NCBI RefSeq assembly: GCF_964213995.1
Contig: NC_135819.1
Location: 1,426,001 to 1,490,000 of the forward strand
Direction of reading: 5' to 3'
Source of the DNA: Mustelus asterias
Lineage: Eukaryota
Length of the DNA stretch: 64,000 nt
The notes below the pieces were generated by a model. That model was not told where the DNA came from and searched no databases. It saw only the letters and a program-made list of their open reading frames with translations. The translations under genes were made by a program, and so were the position numbers. Shown here in pieces: positions 1 to 48,665 of the stretch; the stretch's first letter is position 1; each line of letters opens with the position of its first letter.

Positions 1-46
1 CCAATAATGGATTCCAAATTGCTGTAGGACATAAAGGCGAGTAGAG
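1..46 (-). CDS. ADGRE1-like: ADGRE-like GAIN exon, partial ([16 protein letters not shown])
   Basis: Acceptor cactgccag at 47-48, phase 1. Matches the AVAF(I/V)SY..(L/M)ES(I/V) motif of ADGRE GAIN domains. Confidence 0.8.
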
Positions 47-3000
47 CTGGCAGTGCAGAATAGAAACCGATAAAGATCAGATCAGTAATGCAAAATGAAA
101 TCGCACAGGGAGCCGTTACTCAAACCCAAAACCCAAAACCCCGCTGCTGTGCTTGTTGACCTGTGTTGGATTCTGATCAAGCTCAACATAGCAACTGGAA
201 GCAGGAGGAGGCCATTGGGCCCTTCGAGTCTGCTCCGTCATTCATTAAGATCATGGTTGATCATCAAATTCAATCCTGATATACAATAAAAAAACAAATC
301 AAATTTCACAACATTAAACATGATGTATAAATGCAAGCTGGAATGAACAGATGAATTTGGTGTGCATTTACTCTGGATGGTGTGATAAACATGTGGAGGG
401 AATTCTACTCAAGACAACAATATTTGCAGGGGGTCTTGGCTGCCTGTCACTGATCGGAAGTGGTCCCTGCTCTAATCTGCCTTTAAGGCACATCTGCATG
501 ACATCACTAAAAGGGGCATGTGTCATGTAACCCTGCCTTAGTTTCACCATTGCTTTGAGCAGAGCACACACACATACAGCTGCTCTCACCCTGTGCGGAA
601 GGTGATTAGGTGAGGGGGTGGGGAGAGAGGGTGTTGGATCTGGACATTAATAGGTCCAGACAACAGGTGGTCAAAGGGGTCATGTCTCCTGACGTCTGCT
701 CCCTCTTCTGTGACTAAATTCGCTGCCGGGTGACCCTGGAAAGGGAGCATGGGGGTGGACACCAGCAAAACTGCGACCGTCCGTGTCCAATGGACCCCCA
801 ACCCCGAGGACTCGGATGTTTCAATCGACCCCTTTAATCACATTATAAGTTTCTTTTGAGGTTGCAATGTCCTCACGATGTCAGGGATTGTGGGTTTTAC
901 ACAAAAAGAAAAAAAGCTGGGGTTTACAGTTGTAGGGTCTTGTTTTCTTCTTCAGAATAAACTTGAGCATGACTGGTTCGAAGTAAATACTCCTTTATTT
1001 AAGCGTCTTTTATGAGCATTTTACAGAAAGCGAAATAAGGATTACTTAAGAGAGAGAGAGAGAAGCAAAAGCCAGCTAGCATTGTGCTGGTCAAAAACTC
1101 AAAGCATAATCTGGATCAAACGCTGGCATCTCCACATCATGCCTGTACAGAACAGAGATCAAAACTACAGCCTGTGACAAACCTCAATGACATCACCATC
1201 AAACCATGTGATCAGCTCTCAAATTATTCATGCAAACCTTTTAAATATACAACAGAGATTCTGTTTATGTTGCTACAGTAGCCCTTCAAGTGGCTGCATT
1301 TTAATTTATCCCTCAATTCGCTGATTTAGTTTATTTCAATAACACTAAAGAACCACAGCTCTGATGCTTTCGAGCTTTCTAGCTGTATATAAAAGCGTTC
1401 TCACATGCCTAGTCTTAATAAATTAAACCATAACGTGTTTATCCAATCACCAACAACCTGTCCTGATCCCTCCACGCTGACGCGATCGTTAAGAAAGCCC
1501 ACCAACACCTTTACATTCTCAGGAGGCTACGGAAATTTAGCATGTCCACTATGACTCTCACCAATTTTTTCAGATGCACCATAGAAAGCATTCTTGGTTT
1601 GGCTCCTGCTCTGACCAAGACTGCAAGAAACTACAAAGGTAGCCCAGTCCATCACGCAAACCAGCCTCCCATCCATTGACTCTGTCTACACATCCCGCTG
1701 CCTCAAAAAAGCAGCCAGCATAATCAAGGGCTCCACGTACCCCGGACATTCTCTCTTCCGCCTTCTTCCATCAGGAAAAAGATACAAAAGTCTGAGAACA
1801 AGTGCCAACGGACTCAAGAACAGCTTCTTCCCTGCTGCCATCAGACCTTTGAATGGTTCTATCACACATTAAGCTGATCTTTCTCTACACTCTAGCTGTG
1901 ACTGTAACACTACATTCGGCACCCTCGCCTTTCCTTCTGCCCTGTGTACTCTATGAACAGTATGCTTTGTCTGTATAGCACGCAAGAATCAATACTTTTC
2001 ACCGTATCCGTTTACATGTGACAATAATAAATCAAATCAAAACCAAATCAATCCCTGATGAGTGATTGGTGTCTTGTACAGCCAATAAGCCCAAGGTATT
2101 ATATCATTGTAATAACACAACACCTGGGAAAGTTTGGAAGTTATTTGTGTAATACTCACTCACAATTGCAGGTAAATAAAGTGGAAACATACCAGAGTCC
2201 TTGTCGCCAATAATTGTGCTGGAGTACACATTCAAGGTGTTTCCTTTGGCTTGTAATGTCATCATGTCACTCCCAGTGATGTTGCCCCTTTCAATGAAAC
2301 CTATTTGAAGATCTGGTGGGAATAAGCAAAGAAGATTTGAAAATCACATCATGCCTGAGGCTGGTATCTCTCCATTGCTCCATAAGATGCAATGCCGGGA
2401 ATGATCCTTCAGTGGGCATTGCTGCTGGACCCCTGGACCATAAGACCATAAGATATAGGAGCAGAATTAGGCCATTCGGCCCATTGAGTCTACTCTGCCA
2501 TTCAATCATGGCCGATATGTTTCTCAACAGCCATTCTCCCACCTTTTCCCCACAACCTTTGACCCCCTTACCAATCAGGAACCTACCTATCTCTGTCTTA
2601 AATACACTCAGTGACCTGGCCTCCACAGCCTTCTGCGGCAATGAATTCCATAGATTCACCAATCTCTGGCTGAAGAAATTCCTCCTCATCTCGGTTCTAA
2701 AGGGTTACTCTGAGGCTGTGCCCTCGATTCTTAGTCTCTCCTACTAATGGAAACATCTTCCCCACGTCCACTCTATCCAGGCCATCTGTAAGTTTCAATG
2801 AGATCCCTCCTCATCCTTCTAAACTCCATCAAGCACAGACCCAGCATCCTCAGATGCTCCTCAAACATTAAGCTTTTCATTTCCGGGATCATTCTCGTGA
2901 ACCTCCTCTGGTCCCTCCCCAGGGCCAGCACATCCTTCCATAGATACGGGGCCCACAATTGTTCACAATATTCCAAATGTGGTCTGACCAGAGCCTTGTA

Positions 3001-6000
3001 AAACCTTAACATCCCTGTTTTTGTATTCTAGTCCTCTTGAAATCAATGCTAATATCCTATTTGCCTTCCTAACTACATGGGCATGCGTGAATGGGTGGGA
3101 TTGGAGTCACAAGGAGGGATCACCAGTGATGGAGATGGCGGGGGAAGTGGGAGGGCACGGGTTCAGATGCCAAGACAGGAGGTTGCCTTTCAGTGACACC
3201 GCTCCCCTGCCCCCTCATCACCCCACCATGCTAGGCCCCTTGATCGGGCACTGAGTGCTGGTCAAAGAGGGATGAACCCCACCTCACCCCACTGAGGCCT
3301 AAGGAAATTCCGGCAGGGGGCCCGATTTTAACAAGTTGGTAAAGTCGGGCGTGAGGCGAGTAGCGCGATCCGCGACCGCCTCCACGCCTGTTCCCCCTTT
3401 CCCAAGCACCCAAAATGGCCGCGATCGGCATAAGACATAGGAGCAGAATTAGGCCACTCGGCCCATCGAGTCTGCTCCGCCATTCAATCATGGCTGATAT
3501 TTTTCTCATCCCCATTCTCCTGCCTTTTCCCCATAACCCCTGATCCCCTTATTAATCAAGAGTTTAGAATGATGAGGGGGGGATCTCATTGAAACCTGCA
3601 GAATACTGAAAGGCCCGGATAGAGTGGACATGGGGAAGATGTTTCCATTAGTAGAAAGACTAGGATCCGAGGGCACAGCCTCAGAGTAAAGGGATGACCC
3701 TTTAGAACCGAGAGGAGGAGGAATTTCTGCAACCAGTGGGTGGCGAATCTGTGGAATTCATTGCCACAGAAGGCTGTGGAGTCCAGGTCATTGAATGCAT
3801 TTCAGACTGAGATAAATAGGTTCTTGATTGGTGAGGGGATCAAAGGTTACGGAGAAAAGACAGGAGACTGGAGTTGAGAAACATATCAGCCATGATTGAA
3901 TGGCGGAGATGATTCGATGGACTGAATGGCCTGATTCTGCTCCTATAACTTATGGTCTGGCGGGGGGGGGGGGGGGGGCGGGGGGGTGGAAGCGGGGGTT
4001 GGAGGGGGGGGTGCAGCCATTAGAGGATCAGGTTTTATTCTCTCTTGTGTTGGGTCCAGTACATCTGGAGCGTTCTCTGTTTGTGAGGTAGATGCAGAGC
4101 TTTACCTAAGGTAGGGGTTGTCCAATTTGTGTTTCCTGCTTTGCGTAAGCCCAGAGCAGCTGCTACCACAGCGCTTTCCATATTTTCCAGGAATTGGCTG
4201 GCTACTTTGTGTTTCTCTGTATCGCTTGCATTTTTCCAATCCGTTACATTGCTGAGTAGACCTTCTGCAAAATGAAGAACCGTCTGCCGAGTAAAGCAAT
4301 GCGTTATTTTTGAGTGAAGGCAGAAATAAATTTTTTTCAACACATTCAAGAAAGAAATATTGTTCTTCTGAATAACATTGAACAGTCATGTGAATAAATG
4401 GCACGCCGGTAAAGATCGGAATAATCACACACAAACTAATGTTACTTGCTTTATTACTATTAGGGCGGCATGGTGGCACAGTGGTTAGTGCTGCTGCCTC
4501 ACAGCGCCAGGGACCCGAGTTCAATTTTGGCCTCGGGTGACTGTCTGTGTGGAGTCCACATGTTCTCCCTGTGTCTGCGTGGGTTTTCTCTGGGGGTTCC
4601 GGTTTCTTTCCACACTCCAAAGATGTGTAGGTTAGATGGATTGGCCATGCTAAATTGCCCCTTAGTGTCCAAAGATGTGTGGGTTAGCTGGATTGGCCAT
4701 GCTAAATTGCCCCTTAGTGTCCAAAGATGTGTGGGTTAGCTGGATTGGCCATGCTAAATTGTCCCTTAGTGTCCAAAGATGTGTGGGTTAGCTGGATTGG
4801 CCATGCTAAATTGTCCCTTAGTGTCCAAAGATGTGTGGGTTAGCTGGATTGGCCATGCTAATTGCCTCTTACTATCGAAAGATGTGTGGGTTAGGTTGAG
4901 TGGCCATGCTAAATTGACCCTTAGTGTAGGGGGACTAGCAGGTTGAATACATGCGGGGAGAGGGCCGGGGTGGGATAGTTGTTGGTGTAGGCTTGATGAG
5001 CCAAATGGCCTCTTTCTGCACTGTAGGGATTCTATGGATTACTCCCACAGTTTTCTTTCTTCACGACACAAATTAAAAAAAACTGTTCAAAATGAATAAA
5101 AGGAGATCTGAACAGATCAGGTACAGTGTGATAGGCTAGAGTTATTTTCCTTAGAGGAGAGGAGGCTAAGGGGTTGACCTAATTGAGGTGTATATCACAT
5201 CTCGGCCTTTTGGCCAAAATCAAGCTTCAGATCAAGTCCAAGATGGGACTTATCTTGTCAACTTGGATCATGTTGTCTCTCTTGGGGGGCGGCCATGAAT
5301 TGGAAATAGAATTGGAGCAAGCAAAGAGATGGACTCAGATATGCACGATCCACACTTAACATTGGCTTTGTAACTTTAAGAATGGAGTAAAAATTTAAAT
5401 TAAAAATTGAAGTGTATGATATTATGAACGGCCCAGACAGGATAGACAGGAAAGATTACAGCCGGCACAGCAGCACAGTGGTTAGCACTGCTGCCTCTCA
5501 GCGCCAGGGACCAGGGAGGCGCCAGTGCTAACCACTGTGCCACTGTGCCACCCAACAATTTCTTCTACCACTCTGACAAAGGATCATCCAGACTCGAAAC
5601 GTTCTCTCTCCACAGATGCTATCAGGCCTGCTGAGAATTTCCAGCATTTTCTGCTCATTGCAGTGTTCATGTCAGCCTACTTGCGACACTAATATAAAAA
5701 CTTTAAACTTTTTGCTGCGTTACAATGAGTGGCAAATTTTTTTTCTCTCTTCTTTGGCCGGGGCAGCCACGATGGGCTGAATGGTTCCTTTCCTATCCCT
5801 GTAACCGCATGTATTCACCTTGCTAATCCCCCTTTCTGCAGTGTAACCTGTCCATGGTTCCATCTGTGACTGGCTAAAGCTTGTCATTAATCTCCCAAGG
5901 AGTATTACCAGACTAAATAATTCACAGCAAGAAGCCAAGGGAGGAGATTTTTGTAAAATAGATGCTGCAGATACAAATTCAAAATAAAAACAGAAAATAC

Positions 6001-9000
6001 TGGAAAAACTCAGCAGGTCTGGCAGTGTCTGTGGAGCGAGAAACAGAGTCAATGTTTTGAGTCCCTACGACTCTTCTACAGAGTTCAAGCGAGGTAGAGG
6101 TGTGGCAGGTTTTATGCTGAGGCGATTTTAGGACTGATATGCAAAAAGAACTTGGTCAAATCAGCAGATTTTAAGGAACATGTTAAAGGAGGACAGGGAC
6201 AGACTGAGAGACTGAGAGGTTTACAAAGGGAATTCCAGAGCTTAGGGCAAACACATCATCAATGGTGAGGCAAGGGGAATCAGGGATGCAAAGTAGGCCT
6301 AAAATAGAGGGATACAGAGTTCTCAACAAACATAATATCGTCATTGGCAGCAAGGGAAGCGAACATCGTTTGTGAAAGTGGTGGCGTTGGAGGCAGTTTA
6401 GAGGAGGTTCACCAGACTGATTCTGGGGATGAAAGAACAAAGAAAATTACAACACAGGGACAGGCCCTTTGACCCTCCAAGCCTGCACTGAAAGGGTTGT
6501 TGTATGAGGAGAGATTAAACAGTTTGGGCTTATACTCGCTGGAGTTTAGAAGGATGAGAGGGGATCTGATCGAGGAATATAAAATACTAAAAGGGATTGA
6601 TAACAGTAAATGTAGATCAAATGTTTCCCCGTGTGGGGAACCTCGAACAAGAGGCCACGGGTATAGGTTGAGAGGCGGTAGATTTAAAACTGAGATGAGG
6701 AAGAACTACTTGTGGCAGAGGGTGGTGAATTTGTGGGACTCGCTGCCCCATCGCGCGGGGGAGTCTGAATCATTGAATGGTTTCAAGAAGGAGATAGATA
6801 TAGAGATAGATTTTTTTTTAAAAACAGGTTAAAGGGAGATGGGGAACAGGTGGGGAGGTGGATTTGAGACCAGGGAGAGATCAGCCATGATCTGATTGAA
6901 TGGAGGAGCAGGCTCAAGGTGCTGATTCCTTTGACTCCCTTTGGACCCCATCACTCGCTGAGGTCAGCAACATCACCACTACTTTCTGTCAATAAGAGCT
7001 CTGCTGGTAAAATGTTCCTCATAATTAGACATGAATTAGACTTTGCCTTTGAGAATTCAGCACGGGTAAAGGATTCCGAGACTCACCTGCACAGGAACAA
7101 CAGCTCCAGCATCGTTGCACACCTTCTTGTCTAAGATTGTGGACTGATTCATGAAGCGACAGATCAGGGAATCAGCATTCTGTTTGTTTAACACAAAACA
7201 TTGAACACCTGAAGAAACTGCGGCACCATTGACAGTTTTTTCAACGCCACACAAAAAAAATTGGACCAGCATGTGGGTGGTCCACCGCAATGGAGATACA
7301 GATAGATCAAACATTCATCACATCTCTCTCCATGCACCCCCCTCCCCCCCACCCCCCCACACCACCACCTCTTCCATCGAATGACAAAGGGAGCGGCTTG
7401 GGATAATTGATGGGAGATGGGGAGGATGCTTCATCGATACCACAACAGAGAACAACAGAGCCTCTTCCAAGGCATGACGCTGAGCAGAAATAAAACAGCA
7501 ATCTCCTCAAGCTGTCAATCATTTCAGACTGTCATTCCCCTCAGGCTGTCAATCCCCTCACCCCAGACATTCTCTCTTCCGCCTCCTTCCGCCGAGAGAA
7601 AGATACAAATGTCGGAGGTCACGTATCAACTGACTCAAGCACAGCTTCTTCCCTGCTGCTGTCAGACTTTTGAATGGACCCATCACACATTAAGCTGATC
7701 TTCCTCTACGCCCAGGACCCGATTTTACCATTGCGTTGCGCCCTATTTCGGGCGCAAAAACTTGGTAAAATCGGGCGTGAGGCGAGTAGCATAATCCGCG
7801 CCCACCTCCGCGCTGGTTCCCCCCTTACCAAGACCCGAAAATGGCCACGATTGGGACTTTTTTGCATGCATTTAAATTGACTTAATGGGCTGCACGCCCA
7901 ACCTTACCGGCACTTCCCCTTTCCCACGCATTCGCCCAACCAGAGTCGGCGCGAAACAGACATGGCAGATTCGGGCGCTCCAGTTATTGAGGAGTAAGTG
8001 CCGAGCGTCCGATGGCTCTCTGCTTGAGATCGGAGTAGGAGGAAGGTGGGGTCCGCTGCCAGTCTGCCTGAGATTGGTGAGGGGGAAAGGGGGGTCCGCT
8101 GCCACTCTGCCTGAGATCGGTGAGGGGGAAAGGGGGGTCCGCTACCACTCTGCCTGAGATCAGTGAGGGGGAAAGGGGGGGTCCGCTGCCACTCTGCCTG
8201 AGATCGGTGAGGGGGGAAGGGGGTGTCCGCTACCACTCTGCCTGAGATCAGTGAGGGGGACAGGGGGGTCCACTGCCACTCTGCCTGAGATCAGTGAGGG
8301 GGAAAGGGGGATCCACTGCCACTCTGCCTGAGATCAGTGAGGGGGAAAGGGGGGTCCACTGCCACTCTGCCCGAGATCAGTGAGGGGGAAAGGGGGGGTC
8401 CGCTGCCACTCTGCCTGAGGTCAGTGAGGGGGAAAGGGGGGTCCGCTACCACTCTGCCTGAGATCAGTGAGGGGGAAAGGGGGGTCCACTGCCACTCTGC
8501 CTGAGATCAGTGAGGGGGAAAGGGGGGTCCACTGCCACTCTGCCTGAGATCAGTGAGGGGGAAAGGGGGGTCCGCTGCCACTCTGCCTGAGATCAGTGAG
8601 GGGGAAAGGGGGGTCCACTGCCACTCTGCCCGAGATCAGTGAGGGGGAAAGGGGGGGTCCGCTGCCACTCTGCCTCAGGTCAGTGAGGGGGGGAAGGGGG
8701 TGTCCGCTACCACTCTGCCTGAGATCGGTGAGGGGGAAAGGGGGGTCCGCTACCACTCTGCCTGAGATCAGTGAGGGGGGAAAGGAGGGTCCGCTGCCAC
8801 TCTGCCTGAGATCGGAGGGAGAAAGGGGGGTCCGCTGCCACTCTGCCTGAGATCGGTGAGGGGGAAAGGGGGAGTCCGCTGCCACTCTGCCTGAGATCGG
8901 AGGGGGAAAGAGGGGTCCGCTACCACTCTGCCTGAGGTCAGTGAGGGGGAAAGGGGGGTCCGCTACCATTCTGCCTGAGATTGGTGAAGGGGGAAGGGGG

Positions 9001-12000: not shown

Positions 12001-15000
12001 GCCTCTCCAATATCTGAAAAGCCGAGGGGTTCAAAATTCGTTCTGTGCCATTTTTTTTCGCTTTTGGTTGGGTGGGCAGGAATCGCGACTCACAACCGAC
12101 CCACATCCAGTGAAGTGGAGGGAGCCAAGGCACAATATTGACCTTGTTCAACTGATAGTCCCCTCGGGCCAACCTGCTGGCAACATCTGTGCCCAGGAAA
12201 GCATTTGGCATCAGTAGCACCATCTGCGGCGGTACAACAGATCTCAATTCTCCCTCACCCGCACCTCCACAAGATACTAAATGTGTAGAACTGGGAGATA
12301 AAGCAGCTTAAGCATGAACATGGAAAACTCTTACCGACTGGCATTCTGCAGCAGAGTCAAGAGTTCCATTATCCGAAAGACATTTAAAAGGACGATCTGA
12401 AAACACAAACCAGATATTTAACCTCCCAAATTTCCAATGGGTAAGTAATTAGCCATAGTCCCCAATAGAACAGAGGCACCTCGCTCTAATGCAGGATGGA
12501 TGCAATATGGAAAGCACCCTTCCCGGATGTATCACTGCTTGGTCTGGCTCCTGCTCTGTCCAAGGCCGCAAGAAACTACAGAGGGTTGTGAATGTAGTCC
12601 AGTCCATCACGCAAACCAGCCTCCCATCCATTGACTCTGTCTACACTTCCCGCTATCTCGGAAATGCAGCCAACATAATCAAGGACCCCATGCACCCCAG
12701 ACATTCTCTCTTCCACCTTCATCCATCAGGAAAGAGATACAAAAGTCTGAGATCACGTACCAACCGATTCAAGAACAGCTTTTTCCCTGCTGCCATCAGA
12801 CTTTTGAATGGACCTACCTTGCATTAAGTTGATCTTTCTCTACGCCCTAGCTACGACTGTAACACTACATTCTGCTTTCCCTCTCCCCTATGTACTCTAT
12901 GAATGGAATTCTTTTTCTGTATAGCGCGCAAGAAACAATACTTTTCACTGTATCCCAAAACATGTGACAATAATAAATCAAACCAAATCAAATCAAAAAA
13001 AGCTTGAGGGGCATCATTTTGCAATCATGGGGCAAGGCAAGGAGGCTTCCTTGAGCTATCACAGCCGATCCGGGGATTGAACCCATGCCACTGGCATCGT
13101 ACACCAACCACCTGATCCAAACAACACCCAGTTGGTAATGGACATTAAGGAGAACTTTGTTCCTGGGAAAGGAGTATTGTGTACAGTTCTGGGTGCCACA
13201 CTATAGGAACCCCATAGAACCCCACTAAAAATTCCATCGAGTCTGCACCAACTAATTCCAGCCTTGGATCACTGACTGTGTGGAGTGTGCACGTTCTCCC
13301 CGTGTCTGCCTGAGTTTCCATCGGGTGCTCCTGTTTCCTCCCACAGTCCAAAGATGTACTGGTTAGGTGGATTGGCCATGCTAATTTGTCACTTAAAGTC
13401 CAAAGAGGTGCAGGTTAGGTGGATTGGCCACGGTAAATGCACGGGGCTAGGGGGATAGGATGGTAAGGGGGTGGGCCTGGGTAAGATGCTCTTTTGGGGA
13501 GTCGGTGCTGTCGCAATGGGCCGAATGGCACTGTAGGGATTCTATGGATTCAGCAGTGAATTGTGAAATATAGGAAGACAAAGTCAGTCACTGAAAATCA
13601 GATCAATTGTATGAACTCACCGTCCTTAACGCTGAGGATTATATCTTCTTTCTTGTTATTACCTCCGCTATATTCTACCCGGCAGCAGTACGGACCCTCA
13701 TCTCCCATGGTCACATTGTGTATAGTGAGAGAGACGTTACCTCGCTCAATGTCCCCAGACATGCTGTATTTTGTGTTTAAACGATAGATGATATTTTTCC
13801 CATCAGTTTTAAGCAACACTTTGCTGCAGGAAAATGCAGACATATCACAACACCCGTCTTGACCCCAACACATTGCAGCTAAACCATAATAGGTAACGTT
13901 GTAGGTGCAAGGCAGGCTGACCGAGGATCTCAACTTCCCACTGATCTGCAATGCCTCTGCAAAAAGGAATGGAAATTACATTCAGAGTCTGTCATATGGA
14001 GGAGGACATGTTTCCAAAGCAGCTGAATCACAACAACTGAATCAGAACACTTTTAAGATTAGTGTCTGCAGATTTAACCCGAAGAATGTGGAGTTGCAAA
14101 ATTAAGCGGCTGCTGCTGTTGTGGAACAGGGGGGCAGGAGAAAGCCAGTTACCCCCTCAAGCCAATATAGAAAGCATCTTGTCCGGATGTATCACAGCTT
14201 GGTATGGCTCCTGCTCTGAACAAGATCGCAAGAAACTACAAAGGCTTGGGATCGTAGCCCAGTCCATCACGCAAACCAGCCTCCCATCCATTGACTGGGT
14301 CTACACTTCCCGCTGCCTTGGAAAAGCAGCCAGCATAATCAAGGATCCCACGCATCCTGGACATTTTCTCTTCTACCTTTCCCCGTTGGGAAAAAGATAC
14401 AAAAGTCTGAGGTCCTGTACCAACCGACTCGAGAACAGCTTCTTCCCTGCTGCTGTCAGACTTTTGAATGGACCTACCTTGCATTAAGTTGATCTTTCTC
14501 TGCGCCCTAGCGATGGTAAAAGCACGGGGCTAGGGGGATAGGATGGCAAGGGGGTGGGTGTGGGTAAGATGCTCTTTCTGGGAGTCGGTGCTGACTCAAT
14601 GAGCCGAATGGCACTGCAGGGATTCTATGGATTCAGCAGTGAATTGTGAAATATAGGAAGACAAACTCAGTCACTGAAAATCAGATCAATTGCATGAACT
14701 CACCGTCCTTAACGCTGAGGATTATATCTTCTTTCTTGTTATTACCTCCGCTATATTCTACCCAGCAGCAGTACGGACCCTCATCTCCCATGGTCAAATT
14801 GTGTATAGTGAGAGAGACGTCACCTCGCTCAATGTCCCCAGACAAGTTGTATCTTCTTTTCAAATCATACGTGATTTTTTTCCCAACAGTTGCAAACAAC
14901 ACGTTGGAACAGAAAAGTGCAGACATTTCAGAGCACCCGCCTTGACCCCAACACATTGCAGCTAAACCATAATAGGTAACGTTGTAGGTGCAAGGCAGGC

Positions 15001-33000: not shown

Positions 33001-36000
33001 CACTGCCCAGAGAGCACCCCCCCTAACCTTCGACCTCCTGGGGGGGCCTCAATGGCCTCTCTTCCCTCCAGCGGAATAACCCCCTACATCTAATTCCTTC
33101 TTGAAATCACGCAACGTTTTGGCCTCAACCACTTTCTGTGGGAGTGAATTCCACACATTCGCCACTCTCTGGGTGAAGAAATTTCTCCTCACTTCAGTCC
33201 CACAAGGTTCTGGACTGCCCCGCCATCGGGAACAATTTTTATGTCAGGAGTGCTTCCAAATTTCACTCCTGAAAAGTGTGCCTCTAATCTTTTGACTCTA
33301 CCTCCTGATCCTAGACTCCTCCAACCAGCAGAAATAGTTTCTCTCTTTGTACACTGTCTGTTCCTTTTAATATCTTATTTAAGACTTAGATTAAATCTTC
33401 TAAATTCTGGCAAATGCAACCCTAACCTCCCCTGGTGGTGTAACAACAGGAGTCCAGCTCTCATTCTGGTAAATCGACATTGCACTTCCCCCTGGACCAT
33501 ATCCTTCCGAAAACTGCCCTCACTACTCTAGGTGTGGTCTATACTGTCACCACAGGCCCAGAGGCCCATGGGCTGCTCTCCCCTTTGAGGTGGTGAGAGC
33601 TGACTGGTGGTGATTTAACCTGAGGGTCACCACACCTCAGGCAGGGGGGGGGGGGGGGGGGGCAAGGTTGAGAAGGCCTTTATGGATAATCTCAGCCGGT
33701 ATGGGAATTGAACCCACGCTGTTGGTGTCATACTGCATCACTAACCAGCCATCCAGCCAACTGAGCTAACTGACCCCCAGGTATGGTCTAACCAGGGTTT
33801 TGTATAGTTGAAGCATGACCGCTACCTTGTATGTTTTTTTTTACTTGATTTGTAGGATGTGGGCATCACTGGATGGTTTCAAGCTTCTTGAGTGTTGTTG
33901 GAGCTTCACGTATCCAGGCATGTGGCGAGCATTCCATCACACTCCTGCCTTGTGGGCAGCACGGTGGCACAGTGGTCAGTGCTGTTGCCTTACAGTGCCA
34001 GAGACCTGGGTTCAATTCCCAGCCTCAGGTCACTGTCTATGCGGAGTCTGCACATTCTCCCCATGTCTGCGTGGGTTTCCTCCGGGTGCTCCAGTTTCCT
34101 CCCACAGTCCAAAGACGTGCTGGTTAGGGTGCATTGGCAATGCTAAATTCTCCCTCAGTGTACCCGAACAGGCGCCAGAGTGTGGCGACTAGGGGATTTT
34201 CACAGTAACTTCATTGCAGTGTTAATATAAGCCTACTTGTGGCACTAATAAATAAACCTAAACTTTAGATGGTGGACAGGCTTTGGGGAGTCCAGAAGTA
34301 ATTCAAAAAAGGCTTTTGCTTGCAGAGAATAGGTCCCTGTGTATGAATGTCTGTCACTCCAAGCAAATATAAACGAATCATGTTACAAGCTGGTTATTTT
34401 AAACTCAGGACTGTTCAGCAAGTGCTGCCTCATCATGAAATCATATCTAACAGTAGACCTTTTGGAGCACACCGTTGTATCCGTCCTGATTGAGTGCAGG
34501 GTGAAAAGTATCACCAACTTGTCTTTCTCTTCATCAATATGTATATGCATTTCACTGGAGGAACTACTCGGCTTTTGTGTGGAGACTTTTGCTGCAGTTC
34601 ACAGAGAATCTCTTTGAGTACACTGTTATAGTATAGTTATTTAAACAGCCTCCTGTTTGCCAAGTAAATGAACTGGTTTGCCGTAGTGCTCTGTGAGTCC
34701 CTCGGTAATCCCACCTTACCTCTGACCCACCGGCTGCCATGGTGGTGTCAATAGGCACTCTGATGAAGGCTCAGTGAGTTGTACAATGCCTGAGAATGTG
34801 GGTGAGGCCGATTCAAGTGTGGCGTTCAAATGGGAATTGGTTAAGTACTTGACATGGTAGAACAATATTGCAAGGCTGTGTGGGAGAGGGCGGGGGAATG
34901 GGGCGAGTTAAATTGTTCTTGCAGAGGGCTAGCACAGGAATAATGGCTGAATGGCCTCTTTGCTGTAACTATTCTATAAGTCTTTGAATTCTAAATGGGC
35001 ATGGAATTTTTTTTTTATTCATTCGTGAATGCTGGCCAGCATTTATTGCCCATCCCTAGTTGCCCCTTGAGAAGGTGGTGGTGAGCTGCCTTCTTGAATC
35101 GCTGCAGTCCGCGTGCTGTGGGTTGACCCACAATGCCATTAGGGAGGGAATTCCAGGATTTTGACCCAGCGACTGCAAAGGATCGGCGATATATTTCCAA
35201 GTCAGGATGGTGAGTGGCTTGGAGGGGAACTTGCAGGTGGTGGTGTCCCATGTATCTGCTGCCCTTGTCCTTCTAGATGGAAGTGATCGTGGGTTTGGTG
35301 CTGTCTAAGGATCTTTGGTGAATTGCTGCAGTGCATCTTGTAGATGGTACACACTGCTGCTACTGGGCGTCGGTGGTGGAGAGAGCAGGTGCTTGTGGAT
35401 GTGGTGCCAATCTAGCGGGGCTGCTTTGTCCTGGATGGTGTCGAGCTTCTTGAGTGTTGTTGGAGCTGCACCCATCCAGGCAAGTGGGGAGTATTCCATC
35501 ACACTCCTGACTTGTGCCTTGTCGATCTCCCTCGCTCTTTGTTAATTTAAAATACATACACAATATATCTGCCTTATTGAAAATTCTTGGTTACTAGGAA
35601 AGATTACCGGTATGAATTGGCTAATACACAGCAGATTGTGGAGTTATATTTATTGTTACAAGGTTGAGTATAATTGAGGAGTTGACTTAGGTAGATTGGC
35701 CGTGCTAAATTCTTTCTCAGTGTACCTGAACAGGCGCCGGAGTGTGGCGACTGGGGAATTTTCACAGTAACTTCATTGCAGTACTAATATAAGCCTACTT
35801 GTGACTAATAAATAATAAATAAATACAAATGCTTCATAACTTACCGGATTGGTGAATGTTTTGATTCCAAATGATCCAATGAAAAACAGCTAGGAAACAA
35901 AAAATTGTGATTCGCTTAGATTACGTGCAAACAGTTTTTTTTTGGAAATACATCAAGGCCAGGGTTTTCCCGCCCTTCACACCGGCTGGATCTTCCAGTC

Positions 36001-48000: not shown

Positions 48001-48380
48001 AAACTCAGAAACTCCCTCCCTGGCAACACTGTGGGTGCGCCTATAGCAGATTGACTGCGATGTTTTAAGAAGCGTTCTCACCTTCCCAATTACGGACAGC
48101 TCGGGATGGGCAATAAATATCGAAATGTAAACATTGACCCTGCACGCCACAAATGAATAAAGAGAAACAGTTCCATGAGCAGGGATTACAATTCAAACTC
48201 CAATTCAAGAAAGGCTACAACACTAAAAGGACAAGGTTAATGGCTCTTAACTTCTTACTCAGGTAAATGTATTAAAACAGTTATAAAAATGAACATTCAT
48301 TATATTATGCATAAACTTGTACATACAAAGGTAATCATGCCAAACTCACCATGAAACACCAAACAATGCCGAGTCTTCAT
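1..48380 (-). CDS. ADGRE1-like: Multi-exon ADGRE/EMR-family adhesion GPCR-like gene with three N-terminal TIM-type IgV domains; 3' partial (rest of GAIN, GPS and 7TM lie left of the window)
   Basis: Ten coding exons with canonical AG/GT splice sites and compatible phases (1,1,1,1,1,0,0,1,1) give one open frame: [25 protein letters not shown]/IgV/IgV/Ig[57 protein letters not shown]. The C-terminal exons align by eye to the EMR1 stalk and GAIN region. Family is well supported; orthology is not established. Confidence 0.8.
1457..2052 (+). mobile_element. Rex1/Babar-type LINE 3' fragment
   Basis: Degenerate [20 protein letters not shown]-terminus and (AAATC)n tail. Confidence 0.8.
2193..2312 (-). 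CDS. ADGRE1-like: ADGRE-like GAIN exon ([40 protein letters not shown])
   Basis: 120 bp, phase 1-1, ttattcccaccag / gtatgt. Resembles EMR1 DIESKVI..LDLVAKGDKMKIGCSTI. Confidence 0.85.
2437..3075 (-). mobile_element. CR1 LINE 3' fragment
   Basis: [12 protein letters not shown] and [15 protein letters not shown] motifs, short tandem tail. Confidence 0.85.
3430..3958. mobile_element. CR1 3' fragments in opposite orientations (3430-3560 minus, 3562-3958 plus)
   Basis: CR1 3' UTR and degenerate [10 protein letters not shown] sequence. Confidence 0.7.
4106..4283 (-). CDS. ADGRE1-like: ADGRE-like GAIN subdomain-A exon ([59 protein letters not shown])
   Basis: 178 bp, phase 0-1, actcggcag / gtaaag. 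Contains W....E...A..FLE..ES as in EMR1 and CD97. Confidence 0.88.
4463..5040 (+). mobile_element. HE1/V-SINE-type tRNA SINE with an expanded internal ~52-bp tandem array (about 6 copies)
   Basis: A/B-box head GGCACAGTGGTTAG..GTTCAATT. Repeated unit GATGTG..GGTTAG.TGGATTGGCCATGCTAAATTGCCCCTTAGTGTCCAAA. Confidence 0.85.
5197..5405 (+). mobile_element. Diverged U2-snRNA-related repeat, related to the 52987-54476 element
   Basis: CATCTCGGCCTTTTGGCCAAAATCAAG resembles the U2 5' end. The body AGATCAAG..TCTTGTCA.CT.GGA is shared with the 53-kb element. Confidence 0.5.
6390..6918 (+). mobile_element. CR1 LINE 3' fragment
   Basis: [31 protein letters not shown]. Confidence 0.85.
7087..7179 (-). CDS. 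ADGRE1-like: ADGRE-like stalk exon ([31 protein letters not shown])
   Basis: 93 bp, phase 0-0, aaacaaacag / gtgagt. Resembles EMR1 FCAQINNIFSVLDKVCENKTTVVSLK. Confidence 0.8.
7715..9330. mobile_element. Non-autonomous Harbinger-like DNA element inserted in a Rex fragment
   Basis: Imperfect terminal inverted repeats GGACCCGATTTTACCA / TGGTAAATTAGGTCC. Its 5' part is homologous to 3317-3430 and to the transposase-bearing copy at 51250. Confidence 0.65.
8020..9000. repeat. G-rich minisatellite, ~44-45-bp unit, about 21 copies
   Basis: Unit GAGATCAGTGAGGGGGAAAGGGGGGTCCGCTGCCACTCTGCCT. Confidence 0.95.
9728..11980. mobile_element. Penelope-like element as a palindromic insertion (RT C-terminus and GIY-YIG endonuclease)
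   Basis: Minus-strand [17 protein letters not shown]. Plus-strand [24 protein letters not shown]. Arms ~9765-10650 and 11092-11980 are inverted copies. 15-bp TSD CATTGTTTCAGGAAT. Confidence 0.92.
11888..11924 (+). ncRNA. Minimal hammerhead ribozyme motif in the Penelope repeat; inverted copy at ~9824-9860
   Basis: CAC-CTGAAGA-stem II-GAAAGC-TT-GTG. Stem II is imperfect in this copy. Confidence 0.6.
12335..12396 (-). CDS. ADGRE1-like: ADGRE-like stalk exon ([21 protein letters not shown])
   Basis: 62 bp, phase 1-0, tgtgttttcag / gtaaga. Resembles the post-EGF segment of EMR1 (RVLFKC...QQCQ). Confidence 0.78.
12507..12996 (+). mobile_element. Rex1/Babar LINE 3' fragment; duplicated copies at 14167-14510 and 15250-15680
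   Basis: [42 protein letters not shown]. Confidence 0.88.
13621..13956 (-). CDS. TIM/HAVCR-like IgV domain exon, domain 3 (membrane-proximal)
   Basis: 336 bp, phase 1-1, cctttttgcag / gtgagt. TIM signature LPC.Y..MCWG..C...C..VSLTI..D.G.YCCRVE. Has seven Cys. Confidence 0.92.
14704..15039 (-). CDS. TIM/HAVCR-like IgV domain exon, domain 2
   Basis: 336 bp, phase 1-1, intact splice sites. Six-Cys TIM pattern with RGDVSLTI. Confidence 0.92.
18297..18358 (+). mobile_element. Very short CR1 3'-end insertion
   Basis: Matches the 3' terminus of the CR1 at 54395-54458. Flanked by TACA(C/T)T. Confidence 0.7.
19370..20360 (-). mobile_element. Young 5'-truncated CR1 inserted into CR1 ORF1
   Basis: Open RT C-terminal frame (19465-20286), (AGAACATA)n tail, TSD GTTAG. 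Confidence 0.92.
23275..23292 (+). promoter_or_regulatory. Primer-binding site, tRNA-Thr(AGU)
   Basis: TGGAGGCACCGCTGGGAT is complementary to the 3' end of vertebrate tRNA-Thr(AGU) (..AUCCCAGCGGUGCCUCCA). Confidence 0.85.
23406..24826 (+). pseudogene. gag: Gypsy gag, PNMA/MOAP1-like, with one frameshift near 23730
   Basis: [23 protein letters not shown]....[13 protein letters not shown]. Zinc knuckle [14 protein letters not shown]. Confidence 0.9.
24830..29671 (+). pseudogene. pol: Gypsy pol (protease, dUTPase-like spacer, RT, RNase H, integrase), disrupted
   Basis: [27 protein letters not shown] motif, [14 protein letters not shown]. Several frameshifts and a SINE inside RT. Confidence 0.93.
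26358..26712 (+). mobile_element. Full-length young HE1-type SINE inside the Gypsy RT
   Basis: TSD GAACACG (26351-26357 and 26713-26719), (TCTATGATT)n tail. Confidence 0.95.
30985..31262 (-). mobile_element. tRNA-derived V-SINE variant with a CACTAATAAATAAAC tail; similar copies at 33954-34266, 47169-47450 and 50911-51215
   Basis: HE1-like head and core with a different 3' tail. Confidence 0.75.
31496..31834 (-). CDS. TIM/HAVCR-like IgV domain exon, domain 1 (N-terminal)
   Basis: 339 bp, phase 1-1. [13 protein letters not shown] resembles the TIM-1/TIM-4 FG-loop motif [12 protein letters not shown] as in TIM-4. Confidence 0.93.
32392..33085. mobile_element. Probable Harbinger-type non-autonomous element inserted in a CR1 fragment
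   Basis: GC-rich body with ends GGCCGGGATTCTCC / GGAATAACCCCC. The CR1 fragment resumes on both sides. Confidence 0.45.
35015..35522 (-). mobile_element. CR1/L2-group LINE 3' fragment; related pieces at 39140-39412 and 40690-41255
   Basis: [27 protein letters not shown]. Confidence 0.75.
35845..35889 (-). CDS. Second leader exon ([15 protein letters not shown])
   Basis: 45 bp, phase 1-1, ttgtttcctag / gtaagt, in non-repetitive DNA. Completes a hydrophobic leader ending in S-E-A. Confidence 0.65.
36655..37130 (+). mobile_element. Rex1/Babar LINE 3' fragment, second subfamily
   Basis: [31 protein letters not shown]. Confidence 0.75.
37358..38190. repeat. G-rich minisatellite, 16-bp unit GGGAACGTGTGGGGGT, about 45-50 copies
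   Basis: Direct tandem array. The long Pro/His and Gly/Trp ORFs here are artefacts of the repeat. Confidence 0.95.
38607..40097 (+). mobile_element. Cluster of HE1-type SINEs (38607-38918, 39649-40097) and LINE fragments
   Basis: tRNA-like heads and 52-bp internal repeats. Confidence 0.75.
41817..42128 (-). mobile_element. HE1-type SINE
   Basis: Complete head to tail on the minus strand. Confidence 0.85.
42336..42575 (-). mobile_element. Solo LTR, Mag-type Gypsy related
   Basis: TGTGGTAAACCAC...GCATCA termini resemble the LTR at 59388. TATA and AATAAA present. 5-bp TSD GGCTG. Confidence 0.85.
42895..43455 (-). mobile_element. CR1 3' fragment
   Basis: [14 protein letters not shown] and [11 protein letters not shown]. 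Confidence 0.8.
44357..45322 (-). mobile_element. HE1-type SINE with about 7 copies of the 52-bp unit, interrupted by a plus-strand CR1 3' end (44867-45189)
   Basis: Tandem array at 44480-44848. CR1 [14 protein letters not shown] and (TTTCTATG)n tail. Confidence 0.85.
46600..47165 (+). mobile_element. Highly degenerate Penelope-like RT remnant
   Basis: Remnants of SLP(F/Y)xD..STNI..TDSHSY.D...SH and PLVLT... Confidence 0.5.
47772..47888. mobile_element. Tiny hairpin Penelope-terminus insertion inside a SINE
   Basis: ~39-bp inverted arms. TSD AATAAATGCTG. Confidence 0.88.
48350..48380 (-). CDS. First coding exon, start of signal peptide ([10 protein letters not shown]); whole exon 48350-48418 including 5' UTR
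   Basis: ATG with A at -3, donor gtgagt in phase 1, acceptor tgtgcacag at 48419-48420. Confidence 0.68.
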
Positions 48381-48665
48381 CTTTCTGGTGTGCTTTAGAT
48401 CGAAGCAGCCCCAGAAACCTGTGCACATTTGAGAAGAGAATTATGATTACACTCGCGTCTGCAATGTTAAGATGAATTGATGGTGTGAGCTGATTAGCCC
48501 TTCAACTTAGCCCGTGGCTCAGTGGGCTGGTTCTCCCGTCCCTGGACTGTGGGTTTCAGCTCCACTCCAGAGATCTGAGCGCATCCTCGAGGTTGGGCCT
48601 CAGGAACAGTCCAGAGAGAGTGCCTCTGGAGGTCCTATCGACCCTCTCAGGCAGATGTGAAAGAT

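What the first reader, a model, noticed from the sequence alone, without database searches (positions are those of the whole stretch)
1..48418. Chimeric receptor: TIM-type IgV domains spliced onto an ADGRE/EMR adhesion-GPCR stalk in place of EGF repeats
Seen: one minus-strand exon chain with compatible phases runs from a two-exon leader through three six/seven-Cys IgV exons into exons resembling the EMR1 stalk and GAIN region. The 1.2 kb between the last IgV exon (13621) and the first ADGRE-type exon (12396) is almost all repeat. I found no mucin, transmembrane or terminal exon there, and no EGF exon anywhere. Known: ADGRE (EGF-TM7) proteins carry phase 1-1 EGF exons after a split leader, while TIM proteins are IgV-mucin-TM single-pass phosphatidylserine receptors. 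Inference: phase 1-1 exon shuffling put a TIM ligand-binding module on a 7TM signalling backbone, giving a possible apoptotic-cell or pathogen-sensing GPCR in shark leukocytes. I do not know this architecture from the literature, but I could not search.
Basis: partly seen in the sequence, partly recalled or inferred. Interest (0 to 1): 0.93.

Follow-up and report, generated by a model that had tools for sequence, protein, structure and literature searches.

The report
Shark adhesion GPCR carrying TIM-type IgV domains
This stretch of a smooth-hound shark genome holds the front half of a real gene for a cell-surface signalling receptor of the EMR/CD97 kind whose usual EGF repeats are replaced by one to three antibody-like domains of the type that TIM proteins use to recognise dying cells.

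Summary
Ten minus-strand exons (48380 down to the left edge) match residues 1-528 of Mustelus asterias XP_078090958.1, "adhesion GPCR E3-like isoform X1", at 100%, exon by exon.

- **Architecture:** the 953-aa model has 3 V-set domains, GAIN, GPS and 7tm_2. The GPS and 7TM exons lie beyond the left edge of the window.
- **Isoforms:** X2 and X3 differ from X1 by whole phase 1-1 IgV exons.
- **IgV type:** IgV-A is TIM-type. Its 15 best PDB sequence hits and its first 18 listed fold matches are all TIM-1 to TIM-4.
- **Backbone:** the GAIN-7TM part sits among ADGRE proteins. All 10 IgV-bearing rows form one group with 100/100 support.
- **Spread:** the architecture occurs in models from 11 elasmobranch species. 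The window has no EGF exon.

Phosphatidylserine sensing is inferred from a conserved FG-loop ND motif. Ten literature searches found no description, so this is an annotated but undescribed variant of a known receptor kind. The scan's index holds no similar finding on other DNA.

The parts
48350..48380 (-). Coding exon 1: start codon and first half of a split leader ([10 protein letters not shown] plus 1 base); ends in phase 1; donor GTGAGT
   Evidence: 100% match to P0268 residues 1-10. The same ten residues open the Cetorhinus model P0034.
35845..35889 (-). Coding exon 2: second half of the leader ([15 protein letters not shown]); 45 nt; phase 1-1
   Evidence: 100% match to P0268 residues 11-25. 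The motif WIIWNQNIH is conserved in orthologous models.
31496..31834 (-). IgV-A exon (339 nt, phase 1-1): TIM-type V-set domain with six cysteines and an FG-loop GPFND motif
   Evidence: Pfam V-set E 3.5e-13. The 15 best PDB sequence hits are all TIM-1/2/3/4, E 4.3e-25 to 2.1e-18, and the next hit is at 4.9e-7. AlphaFold model pLDDT 93.6; the first 18 listed Foldseek matches (ranks 1-19) are all TIM IgV, TMq 0.75-0.90. 100% match to P0268 residues 26-138.
14704..15039 (-). IgV-B exon (336 nt, phase 1-1): TIM-type V-set domain; FG loop reads GGNN (aspartate lost, one residue shorter); CCW in place of CCR
   Evidence: Pfam V-set E 4.4e-13. 100% match to P0268 residues 139-250. Motifs.
13621..13956 (-). 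IgV-C exon (336 nt, phase 1-1): TIM-type V-set domain with seven cysteines; FG loop reads GGNN. Recent tandem copy of IgV-B: a 669-nt unit including intron is 93.9% identical
   Evidence: Pfam V-set E 9.8e-12. 100% match to P0268 residues 251-362. Duplication unit.
12335..12396 (-). Stalk exon 1 (62 nt; [21 protein letters not shown]); starts in phase 1, ends in phase 0
   Evidence: 100% match to P0268 residues 363-383. Conserved in shark orthologues at 50-71% identity (38% in Pristis).
7087..7179 (-). Stalk exon 2 (93 nt; [31 protein letters not shown]); phase 0-0
   Evidence: 100% match to P0268 residues 384-414.
4106..4283 (-). GAIN exon 1 (178 nt; [16 protein letters not shown]...NWTTPTL); starts in phase 0, ends in phase 1
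   Evidence: Taken alone it gives a weak Pfam GAIN hit (E 0.025). In the whole model P0268, GAIN scores E 2.2e-8 over residues 416-554.
2193..2312 (-). GAIN exon 2 (120 nt; [40 protein letters not shown]); phase 1-1
   Evidence: 100% match to P0268 residues 475-513.
1..46 (-). Start of GAIN exon 3 ([15 protein letters not shown]...), which runs off the left edge of the window. The rest of GAIN, the GPS, the 7TM and the tail (P0268 residues 529-953) lie outside the window
   Evidence: 100% match to P0268 residues 514-528.

Best explanation
The window holds the 5' two thirds of the coding exons of one gene of the starry smooth-hound, Mustelus asterias. The gene encodes an adhesion GPCR of the ADGRE (EMR/CD97) clade in which TIM-type IgV domains take the place of the EGF repeats.

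Shown here: a split leader, three phase 1-1 IgV cassette exons, two short cysteine-bearing stalk exons and the first GAIN exons. The database model continues into a GPS with an intact HL/SS cleavage motif, a Stachel-like SSFAVLMAL sequence and a secretin-type 7TM. RefSeq lists isoforms with three, two (B+C) or one (A) IgV. The gene is one orthologue group conserved across sharks and a sawfish.

Inferred mechanism:
- The receptor is cleaved at the GPS and held together non-covalently, like other ADGREs.
- IgV-A is the N-terminal (membrane-distal) domain. It keeps all six TIM cysteines and the FG-loop asparagine-aspartate pair. I recall that this pair coordinates calcium in the TIM ligand pocket. 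It therefore probably binds phosphatidylserine or a similar anionic ligand on dying cells, vesicles or enveloped particles.
- Engagement then exposes or repositions the tethered agonist and triggers G-protein signalling.
- My odds: about 0.9 that this is one gene with this architecture, and about 0.45 that the ligand is phosphatidylserine.

Inferred origin: an IgV exon of a TIM-like gene entered a duplicated ADGRE gene between the leader and the stalk before sharks and rays split. Lineage-specific IgV exon duplications followed.
For: One gene with this architecture:
- All ten exons match XP_078090958.1 at 100% over residues 1-528.
- Pfam on the model gives 3 V-set, GAIN, GPS and 7tm_2.
- Isoforms of 953, 840 and 729 aa differ by 113 and 224 aa, which are whole IgV exons.
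- V-set together with GPS and/or 7tm_2 occurs in models from 11 elasmobranch species. The full V-set + GPS + 7tm_2 set is present in 8; 3 are cut short.
- Two of those models come from a pipeline other than RefSeq: GCB80667.1 (Scyliorhinus torazame) and chiPu_0018170 (Chiloscyllium punctatum).

TIM-type IgV:
- The 15 best PDB sequence hits are all TIM family.
- The first 18 listed fold matches (ranks 1-19) are all TIM IgV.
- Six cysteines and G98/N101 are invariant across 26 aligned TIM-like IgVs.
- An FG-loop ND is kept in at least one IgV in 10 of the 11 species.

ADGRE-type backbone:
- PDB ranking of the 7TM half: ADGRE1 281.5 bits, ADGRL2 236, ADGRE5 233.5, ADGRL3 about 227, ADGRL4 196, ADGRD1 155.
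- In a tree of 42 GAIN-7TM rows, all 10 IgV-bearing rows form one group (ultrafast bootstrap 100, SH-aLRT 100) among EGF-bearing shark and bony-vertebrate ADGRE rows.

Other points:
- The window has no EGF exon.
- The GPS motif HLSSFAVL is intact in Mustelus.
- The leader opening MKTRHC resembles EGF-type shark ADGRE N-termini such as METRHS, MVTQHC and MKTCRC. This is weak evidence.
Against: - No listed run is on record as RNA.
- Two protein searches aimed at transcript-derived ORFs crossing the IgV-stalk junction found none.
- The join therefore rests on gene models, which could in principle repeat one systematic error.
- GPS and 7TM are outside the window.
- Against a classical TIM pocket: all three Mustelus IgVs carry a 3-residue insertion between the third and fourth cysteine relative to the 23 other TIM-like IgVs aligned. 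This lies about where I recall the CC' loop to be, so pocket geometry may differ.
- IgV-B and IgV-C have lost the aspartate.
- The Chiloscyllium punctatum partial model has no ND.
- The GPS histidine is replaced in the Pristis and Rhincodon models.
- The tree has no non-ADGRE outgroup, so it is unrooted.
Confidence: 0.8

Rival explanations
1. The receptor is real, but the IgV domains bind something other than phosphatidylserine. Candidates are a protein or glycan partner on another cell (I recall such non-lipid partners for TIM-3 and TIM-1) or a pathogen surface. The pocket motif would then be a family inheritance rather than the working site.
For: - A 3-residue insertion between the third and fourth cysteine is found only in the Mustelus IgVs among 26 aligned.
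- IgV-B and IgV-C lack the aspartate, yet remain intact exons and are modelled as included.
- IgV-B and IgV-C differ by 25.5 replacement against 3.5 silent changes (pN/pS about 2). The changes cluster in the middle of the domain, while the 144 nt of upstream intron are identical. That pattern fits changing protein or pathogen ligands. The counts are small.
Against: - ND is kept in at least one IgV in 10 of 11 species across more than one elasmobranch superorder, which argues for selection on that site.
- The predicted fold superposes on TIM-4 and TIM-3 structures solved with phosphatidylserine at TMq 0.85-0.86.
Confidence: 0.35
2. There are two neighbouring genes: a TIM-like IgV gene and an ADGRE-like gene. 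Gene-prediction software fused them wrongly because their phases happen to fit.
For: - I saw no transcript.
- All support for the join comes from predicted models.
- Several models of the family are cut or have odd N-termini: Carcharodon, Rhincodon and Heptranchias.
Against: - No mucin, TM, tail or terminal exon follows the IgV exons. The 1.2 kb before stalk exon 1 is 85% repeat.
- No other leader or EGF exon precedes the stalk.
- All 10 rows of this GAIN-7TM orthologue group carry IgV and none carries EGF, across 10 species.
- Two different annotation pipelines agree.
- RefSeq gives three isoforms that all join an IgV exon to the same stalk exon.
- The two-exon leader is conserved in front of the IgV in most species.
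Confidence: 0.05
3. The locus is a decaying pseudogene or a pile of exon debris, and the models read through damage.
For: - The introns are crowded with repeats, including a Ty3/Gypsy-like element between IgV-A and IgV-B.
- IgV-B has CCW in place of the conserved CCR.
Against: - All ten exons are open. Their flanking bases are canonical and they match the model at 100% with no frameshift or stop.
- The orthologue group is conserved with intact 7tm_2 scores of E 1e-52 to 1e-57 in seven species.
Confidence: 0.03

Closest known systems
ADGRE1 (EMR1, F4/80) and the ADGRE1-4 group of adhesion GPCRs
   Same: - Best PDB match for the 7TM half: 281.5 bits over 282 residues.
- GAIN, a GPS with HL/SS, and an SSFAVLMA-type tethered-agonist sequence.
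- On the same side of the tree's deepest split as bony-vertebrate 'E1'-named rows.
- Split leader followed by phase 1-1 cassette exons for the adhesive repeats. The exon plan of the mammalian genes is recalled, not tested here.
   Different: There are no EGF or calcium-binding EGF repeats at all. One to three TIM-type V-set domains stand in their place.
ADGRE5 (CD97)
   Same: - The GAIN and 7TM align to CD97 structures: 8ikj at 258 bits, 7ydh at 233.5 bits, and the 9mqr ectodomain over query residues 180-412.
- Variable numbers of N-terminal repeats arise by splicing. The review passage read states this for EGF domains of ADGRE2 and ADGRE5.
   Different: - CD97-type shark and bony-fish proteins form a separate, strongly supported group in the tree (100/100).
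- The ligand module is EGF, not IgV.
TIM family (HAVCR1/TIM-1, TIM-2, HAVCR2/TIM-3, TIMD4/TIM-4)
   Same: - The IgV domain has six conserved cysteines and an FG-loop G-x-F-N-D motif.
- E 4.3e-25 to TIM-4 and 1.2e-24 to TIM-1.
- Predicted fold TMq up to 0.90, rmsd 1.3 A to TIM-1.
   Different: - There is no mucin stalk, no single-pass TM and no TIM cytoplasmic tail. The IgV is followed by GAIN-GPS-7TM.
- There are up to three IgVs in tandem.
- The Mustelus copies carry a 3-residue insertion between the third and fourth cysteine.
ADGRB1 (BAI1), a phosphatidylserine-recognising adhesion GPCR
   Same: It may work alike: an adhesion GPCR that senses phosphatidylserine on apoptotic cells. The 2026 review lists phosphatidylserine as a ligand of B1 through its thrombospondin repeats, and of G1 (passages read).
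   Different: - The ligand module (thrombospondin repeats) is unrelated, and the aGPCR family is different.
- No binding has been shown for the shark receptor.
Ig-bearing adhesion GPCRs of mammals (ADGRF5/GPR116 'Ig-Hepta', ADGRA2/3). Recalled, not tested here
   Same: They have immunoglobulin-superfamily domains on an adhesion GPCR.
   Different: By my recollection those are C2/I-set domains combined with SEA or LRR modules, in other aGPCR families. Here the domains are V-set of the TIM type, in the ADGRE clade.

Membership tests
Adhesion GPCR (class B2) | Secretin-type seven-transmembrane domain | tested here: met
   Pfam 7tm_2 E 1.3e-52 at residues 643-881 of P0268, the RefSeq model whose residues 1-528 the window encodes. 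The 7TM exons themselves lie outside the window and I did not see their DNA.
Adhesion GPCR (class B2) | GAIN domain with a GPS motif directly before TM1 | tested here: met
   GAIN E 2.2e-8 (residues 416-554) and GPS E 9.5e-13 (residues 587-628) in P0268. The motif CSCSHLSSFAVLMA is present. Three GAIN exons are in the window.
Adhesion GPCR (class B2) | Autoproteolysis at the GPS and activation by the tethered agonist | not testable with these tools
   Only the HL/SS motif can be read. Cleavage and signalling need experiments.
ADGRE (EGF-TM7) family | GAIN-7TM sequence groups with ADGRE proteins | tested here: met
   - The named relatives are ADGRE1/2/3/5 or CD97-like.
- PDB ranking puts ADGRE1 first for the 7TM.
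- The tree places the group among ADGRE rows.
- No non-ADGRE outgroup was in the tree.
ADGRE (EGF-TM7) family | N-terminal tandem EGF / calcium-binding EGF repeats | tested here: not met
   - No EGF family appears in Pfam scans of the models of 10 species, scanned at E<=0.001 or 0.0001.
- No EGF exon is in the window.
- By domain definition this is therefore not an EGF-TM7 protein, although its backbone belongs to that clade.
ADGRE (EGF-TM7) family | Leukocyte-restricted expression | not tested
TIM family | IgV domain with six cysteines (two extra disulfides) | tested here: met
   C17, C30, C36, C44, C91 and C92 of IgV-A are invariant or nearly invariant in a 26-sequence alignment. All six align with the TIM-4 cysteines.
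TIM family | FG-loop asparagine-aspartate of the metal-ion-dependent ligand site (the role of these residues is recalled) | tested here: met
   IgV-A reads GPFND, aligned to GWFND of TIM-4 and TIM-1. This is not met in IgV-B and IgV-C, which read GGNN.
TIM family | Mucin-like stalk, single-pass TM and cytoplasmic tail after the IgV | tested here: not met
   The IgV is followed by a 51-residue cysteine-bearing stalk and then GAIN-GPS-7TM. No such exon lies between IgV-C and stalk exon 1. The gene is therefore not a TIM family member; it carries a TIM-type domain.
TIM family | Calcium-dependent phosphatidylserine binding | not testable with these tools
   Needs a binding assay. The only support is fold similarity to TIM-4 and TIM-3 structures solved with phosphatidylserine (TMq 0.85-0.86).

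The most novel reading that the evidence does not exclude
Elasmobranchs may use this receptor as their main, or only, TIM-type sensor. It would be a G-protein-coupled phosphatidylserine or enveloped-particle detector, conserved since before sharks and rays split, with cassette IgV exons that duplicate and diverge by lineage. In the boldest form, the TIM-type IgV first worked on this adhesion-GPCR backbone, and the mucin-anchored TIM proteins of bony vertebrates are the derived arrangement. My evidence does not exclude this. None of the ten non-GPCR relatives of the IgV that I could name came from a cartilaginous fish: nine were from frogs, mammals and a mormyrid fish, and the tenth carried no name. 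However, 140 of the 150 listed hits stayed unnamed, and the tree is unrooted.
Probability: 0.12. Interest if true: 0.82.

Novelty: new variant of a known kind. Interest (0 to 1): 0.62.

Why it matters
- **A new module on ADGRE receptors.** Adhesion GPCRs are defined by the adhesive modules on a common GAIN-7TM engine. ADGRE receptors are known as EGF-TM7 proteins of immune cells, mostly with few or unknown ligands. Here the same engine has carried a different, well-understood ligand module (the TIM IgV) for the whole history of sharks and rays.
- **A concrete, testable ligand hypothesis.** Calcium-dependent phosphatidylserine binding is an unusually specific prediction for an orphan-type receptor.
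- **A natural experiment.** It shows how a lipid-binding Ig domain might drive tethered-agonist signalling.
- **A clean case of phase 1-1 exon shuffling.** It was followed by lineage-specific cassette duplication: three IgVs in Mustelus and in Pristis, two in Scyliorhinus canicula, one elsewhere.
- **A naming problem.** Automatic names such as 'ADGRE3-like' hide a distinct architecture in public annotation.

Tried and rejected
- **Transcript-derived ORFs as a substitute.**
  - A search scored on residues 26-330 of P0267 found 9 proteins, all from genome annotation.
  - A profile of junction-spanning parts of four orthologues found 3 proteins. One was a Logan ORF (P0275, 394 aa on a 2019-nt contig) that covers only the IgV part. 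The second was the Chiloscyllium punctatum partial model. The third was a frog HAVCR1 homologue. None crosses the junction from a transcript.
  - Both searches see only proteins of 0.55-1.75 times the query length.
- **EGF exons.** None found.
- **One GAIN exon alone in Pfam.** The hit was below the cut-off. I relied on the whole model and on exon-by-exon identity instead.
- **Literature.** Ten counted searches listed no paper on an IgV- or TIM-bearing ADGRE.
  - In PMC8584163 I read passages only. It has 0 occurrences of 'shark', 'cartilaginous', 'immunoglobulin' and 'chimer', and one of 'Ig domain' that was not among the passages shown.
  - In PMC13197933 I read passages of the first 300,000 of 412,533 characters. 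It has 0 occurrences of 'shark', 'cartilaginous', 'V-set' and 'elasmobranch'.
  - I did not ask for supplements. Suppl. Figure S1E and Table S1 of PMC8584163 list all the ADGRE sequences used there and could bear on the claim that this is undescribed.
- **Tree rows.** Of the 48 proteins I chose, 6 were dropped because my pattern found no GPS to cut at: P0169, P0170, P0225, P0159, P0186 and P0187. That left 42 rows. There was no outgroup.
- **Teleost model P0263 (Diretmus).** It has I-set Ig plus EGF plus 7TM, but it hit no exon of the window. I set it aside as a different combination, or possibly a fused model.
- **Earlier findings of the scan.** There is none on other DNA. The only notes are on this same stretch.


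Full report
**What is in the window.** They are phase 1-1 exons of 339, 336 and 336 nt with canonical flanking bases. A search of 1.84 billion representative proteins with IgV-C alone returned long proteins with the IgV at their N-terminus. Pfam showed that four of them combine V-set with GAIN, GPS and 7tm_2. They are RefSeq models from Pristis pectinata, Cetorhinus maximus, Heptranchias perlo and Rhincodon typus, named 'adhesion G protein-coupled receptor E2/E3-like' or 'uncharacterized'.

These are a second leader exon at about 35.9 kb, a second stalk exon at about 7.1 kb, and a GAIN exon that runs off the left edge.

**Identity of the locus.** A word-indexed search with the Cetorhinus protein brought in a Mustelus asterias model that matches the window's exons at 100%. 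Its cluster holds three isoforms: X1 of 953 aa, X2 of 840 aa and X3 of 729 aa. Taken one exon at a time, the window's ten exons equal residues 1-528 of X1 without a mismatch.

X1 reads leader, IgV-A, IgV-B, IgV-C, stalk, GAIN, GPS and 7TM. Pfam on X1 gives 3 V-set, GAIN (E 2.2e-8), GPS (E 9.5e-13) and 7tm_2 (E 1.3e-52). The GPS and 7TM exons lie outside the window.

**Is the join real?** I could not see RNA. I left that part out of everything afterwards. Two searches for transcript-derived ORFs across the junction found none.

The join therefore rests on indirect evidence, which I judge strong:
- No mucin, TM, tail or EGF exon lies between the IgV exons and the stalk. 1044 of the 1224 intron bases there are repeats.
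- The phases fit only with the conserved stalk exons.
- Models from 11 elasmobranch species show V-set with GPS and/or 7tm_2. Two come from a non-RefSeq pipeline.
- In a tree of the GAIN-7TM part alone (42 rows; 6 of the 48 chosen were dropped for lack of a recognisable GPS), all 10 IgV-bearing rows form one group with 100/100 support. Its inner branching is compatible with species relationships. A prediction artefact would not pick out one orthologue group in every species.
- From my own knowledge, RefSeq isoforms are normally called only with transcript support. I could not check this.

**What kind of IgV.** IgV-A's 15 best PDB sequence hits are TIM-4, TIM-1, TIM-3 and TIM-2, at E 4.3e-25 to 2.1e-18. 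The next hit, CEA, is at 4.9e-7. All six TIM cysteines align. The FG loop reads GPFND against GWFND in TIM-4 and TIM-1.

An AlphaFold model built from a 26-sequence alignment has pLDDT 93.6. Its first 18 listed Foldseek matches (ranks 1-19; rank 14 was not listed) are all TIM IgV structures, including TIM-4 and TIM-3 solved with phosphatidylserine. They score TMq 0.75-0.90. CD300 follows at 0.74. The alignment was rich in TIM-like sequences, so this fold result is not independent of the sequence result.

An FG-loop ND is kept in at least one IgV in 10 of the 11 species. In Mustelus only IgV-A keeps it. All three Mustelus IgVs have a 3-residue insertion between the third and fourth cysteine that none of the 23 other aligned IgVs has.

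**What kind of backbone.**
- By bit score against PDB chains that hold only the 7TM part: ADGRE1 281.5, ADGRL2 236, ADGRE5 233.5, ADGRL3 about 227, ADGRL4 196, ADGRD1 155.
- Of the 120 relatives listed, 12 carry V-set: 11 elasmobranch models and one teleost model with a different Ig type. Most of the other 108 carry calcium-binding EGF and are named ADGRE or CD97.
- The tree's deepest split separates a CD97-like group from a group holding the 'E1'-named tetrapod rows and three sturgeon rows, other shark ADGREs and the IgV group. It is unrooted.
- The leader's opening residues resemble those of EGF-type shark ADGREs. This fits an IgV exon entering an ADGRE gene, but the evidence is weak.

**Dynamics of the IgV cassettes.** IgV-B and IgV-C are a recent tandem copy. 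A 669-nt unit including intron is 93.9% identical, and IgV-A's unit is 89.3% identical. Between B and C the exon differs at 29 of 333 bases, with 25.5 replacement and 3.5 silent changes. The 144 intron bases upstream are identical, and 12 of the 189 downstream differ. The counts are small, but they point the way the scan's note s1-891945 says. Pristis has three near-identical IgVs of its own, and S. canicula has two. The cassette number therefore changed independently in several lineages.

**How it most likely works.** The domain order and the intact motifs are shown. The rest is inferred. The receptor is cleaved at HL/SS. Its N-terminal fragment presents one to three TIM-type IgVs. IgV-A binds phosphatidylserine or a similar ligand through its calcium site. 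Engagement then frees or repositions the SSFAVLMAL tethered agonist.

Phosphatidylserine-sensing adhesion GPCRs are known with other modules: ADGRB1 through thrombospondin repeats, and ADGRG1 (passages read). This would be a third, independent solution.

**Novelty.** The sequences are public and automatically named. Ten literature searches and passages of the two most relevant papers gave no description of the architecture. I could not see supplementary files. I rate it a new variant of a known kind. It is interesting to adhesion-GPCR and comparative-immunology specialists, but it is not a new principle.

Noticed in passing
window 22091-30114, + strand: A Ty3/Gypsy-like LTR retrotransposon sits in the intron between IgV-A and IgV-B. 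It has long gag-, protease-, RT-, RNase H- and integrase-like ORFs (23747-24826, 24939-25694, 25727-26560, 26611-28026, 27956-29671). It is flanked by similar ORF-bearing ends at about 22.1-22.9 kb and 29.7-30.1 kb. The RT ORF runs into a SINE-like sequence near 26.3-26.6 kb.
   Followed up: no
window 7900-9050: A tandem array lies in the stalk 1 to stalk 2 intron. Its stop-free stretches recur at 43-nt offsets in rotating frames (...[29 protein letters not shown]...). GC reaches 0.56 with strong G skew on the + strand.
   Followed up: no
window 37050-38270: A long low-complexity tandem repeat in intron 1 is open in several frames on both strands ([16 protein letters not shown]... on the minus strand, [16 protein letters not shown]... 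on the plus strand). GC is 0.57.
   Followed up: no
window 44400-44900 and 4500-5040: Arrays of a 52-nt unit ([41 protein letters not shown] in rotating frames) look derived from a SINE-like element. Single copies of that element are scattered through the window.
   Followed up: no
window 16000-21000, - strand: LINE-type reverse-transcriptase and endonuclease-like ORFs (16964-17576, 17727-18278, 18614-18919, 19465-20286, 20343-20978) lie in the same intron as the Gypsy-like element.
   Followed up: no
window 13622-15037 (IgV-B against IgV-C): The two recent IgV copies differ by 25.5 replacement and 3.5 silent changes (pN/pS about 2). 21 of 111 residues differ, clustered at domain positions 33-66. 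The 144 nt upstream of each exon are identical.
   Followed up: partly
P0005 (Pristis pectinata) and P0038 (Rhincodon typus): The GPS histidine is replaced in these two orthologous models (CSCSSLSS and CSCRVLSS against CSCSHLSS elsewhere). These receptors may therefore not self-cleave.
   Followed up: no
P0263 (Diretmus argenteus, KAM3864607.1): This teleost 'ADGRE5-like' model combines three I-set Ig domains, calcium-binding EGF repeats, GPS and 7tm_2. It is a different Ig-plus-ADGRE combination, or possibly a fused gene model. It hit none of the window's exons.
   Followed up: partly
P0275 and cluster (Logan ORFs, 394 aa on contigs of 2.0-2.5 kb): These are transcript-sized contigs from an unnamed organism. 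They encode several tandem TIM-like V-set domains, 62% identical to the shark IgV over the part compared, with no GAIN part.
   Followed up: no
window 31497-31835, 14705-15040, 13622-13957: All three Mustelus IgVs carry three extra residues between the third and fourth cysteine (CSQMSAYSC). None of the 23 other aligned TIM-like IgVs has them, and neither do the orthologous models whose sequences I read.
   Followed up: partly
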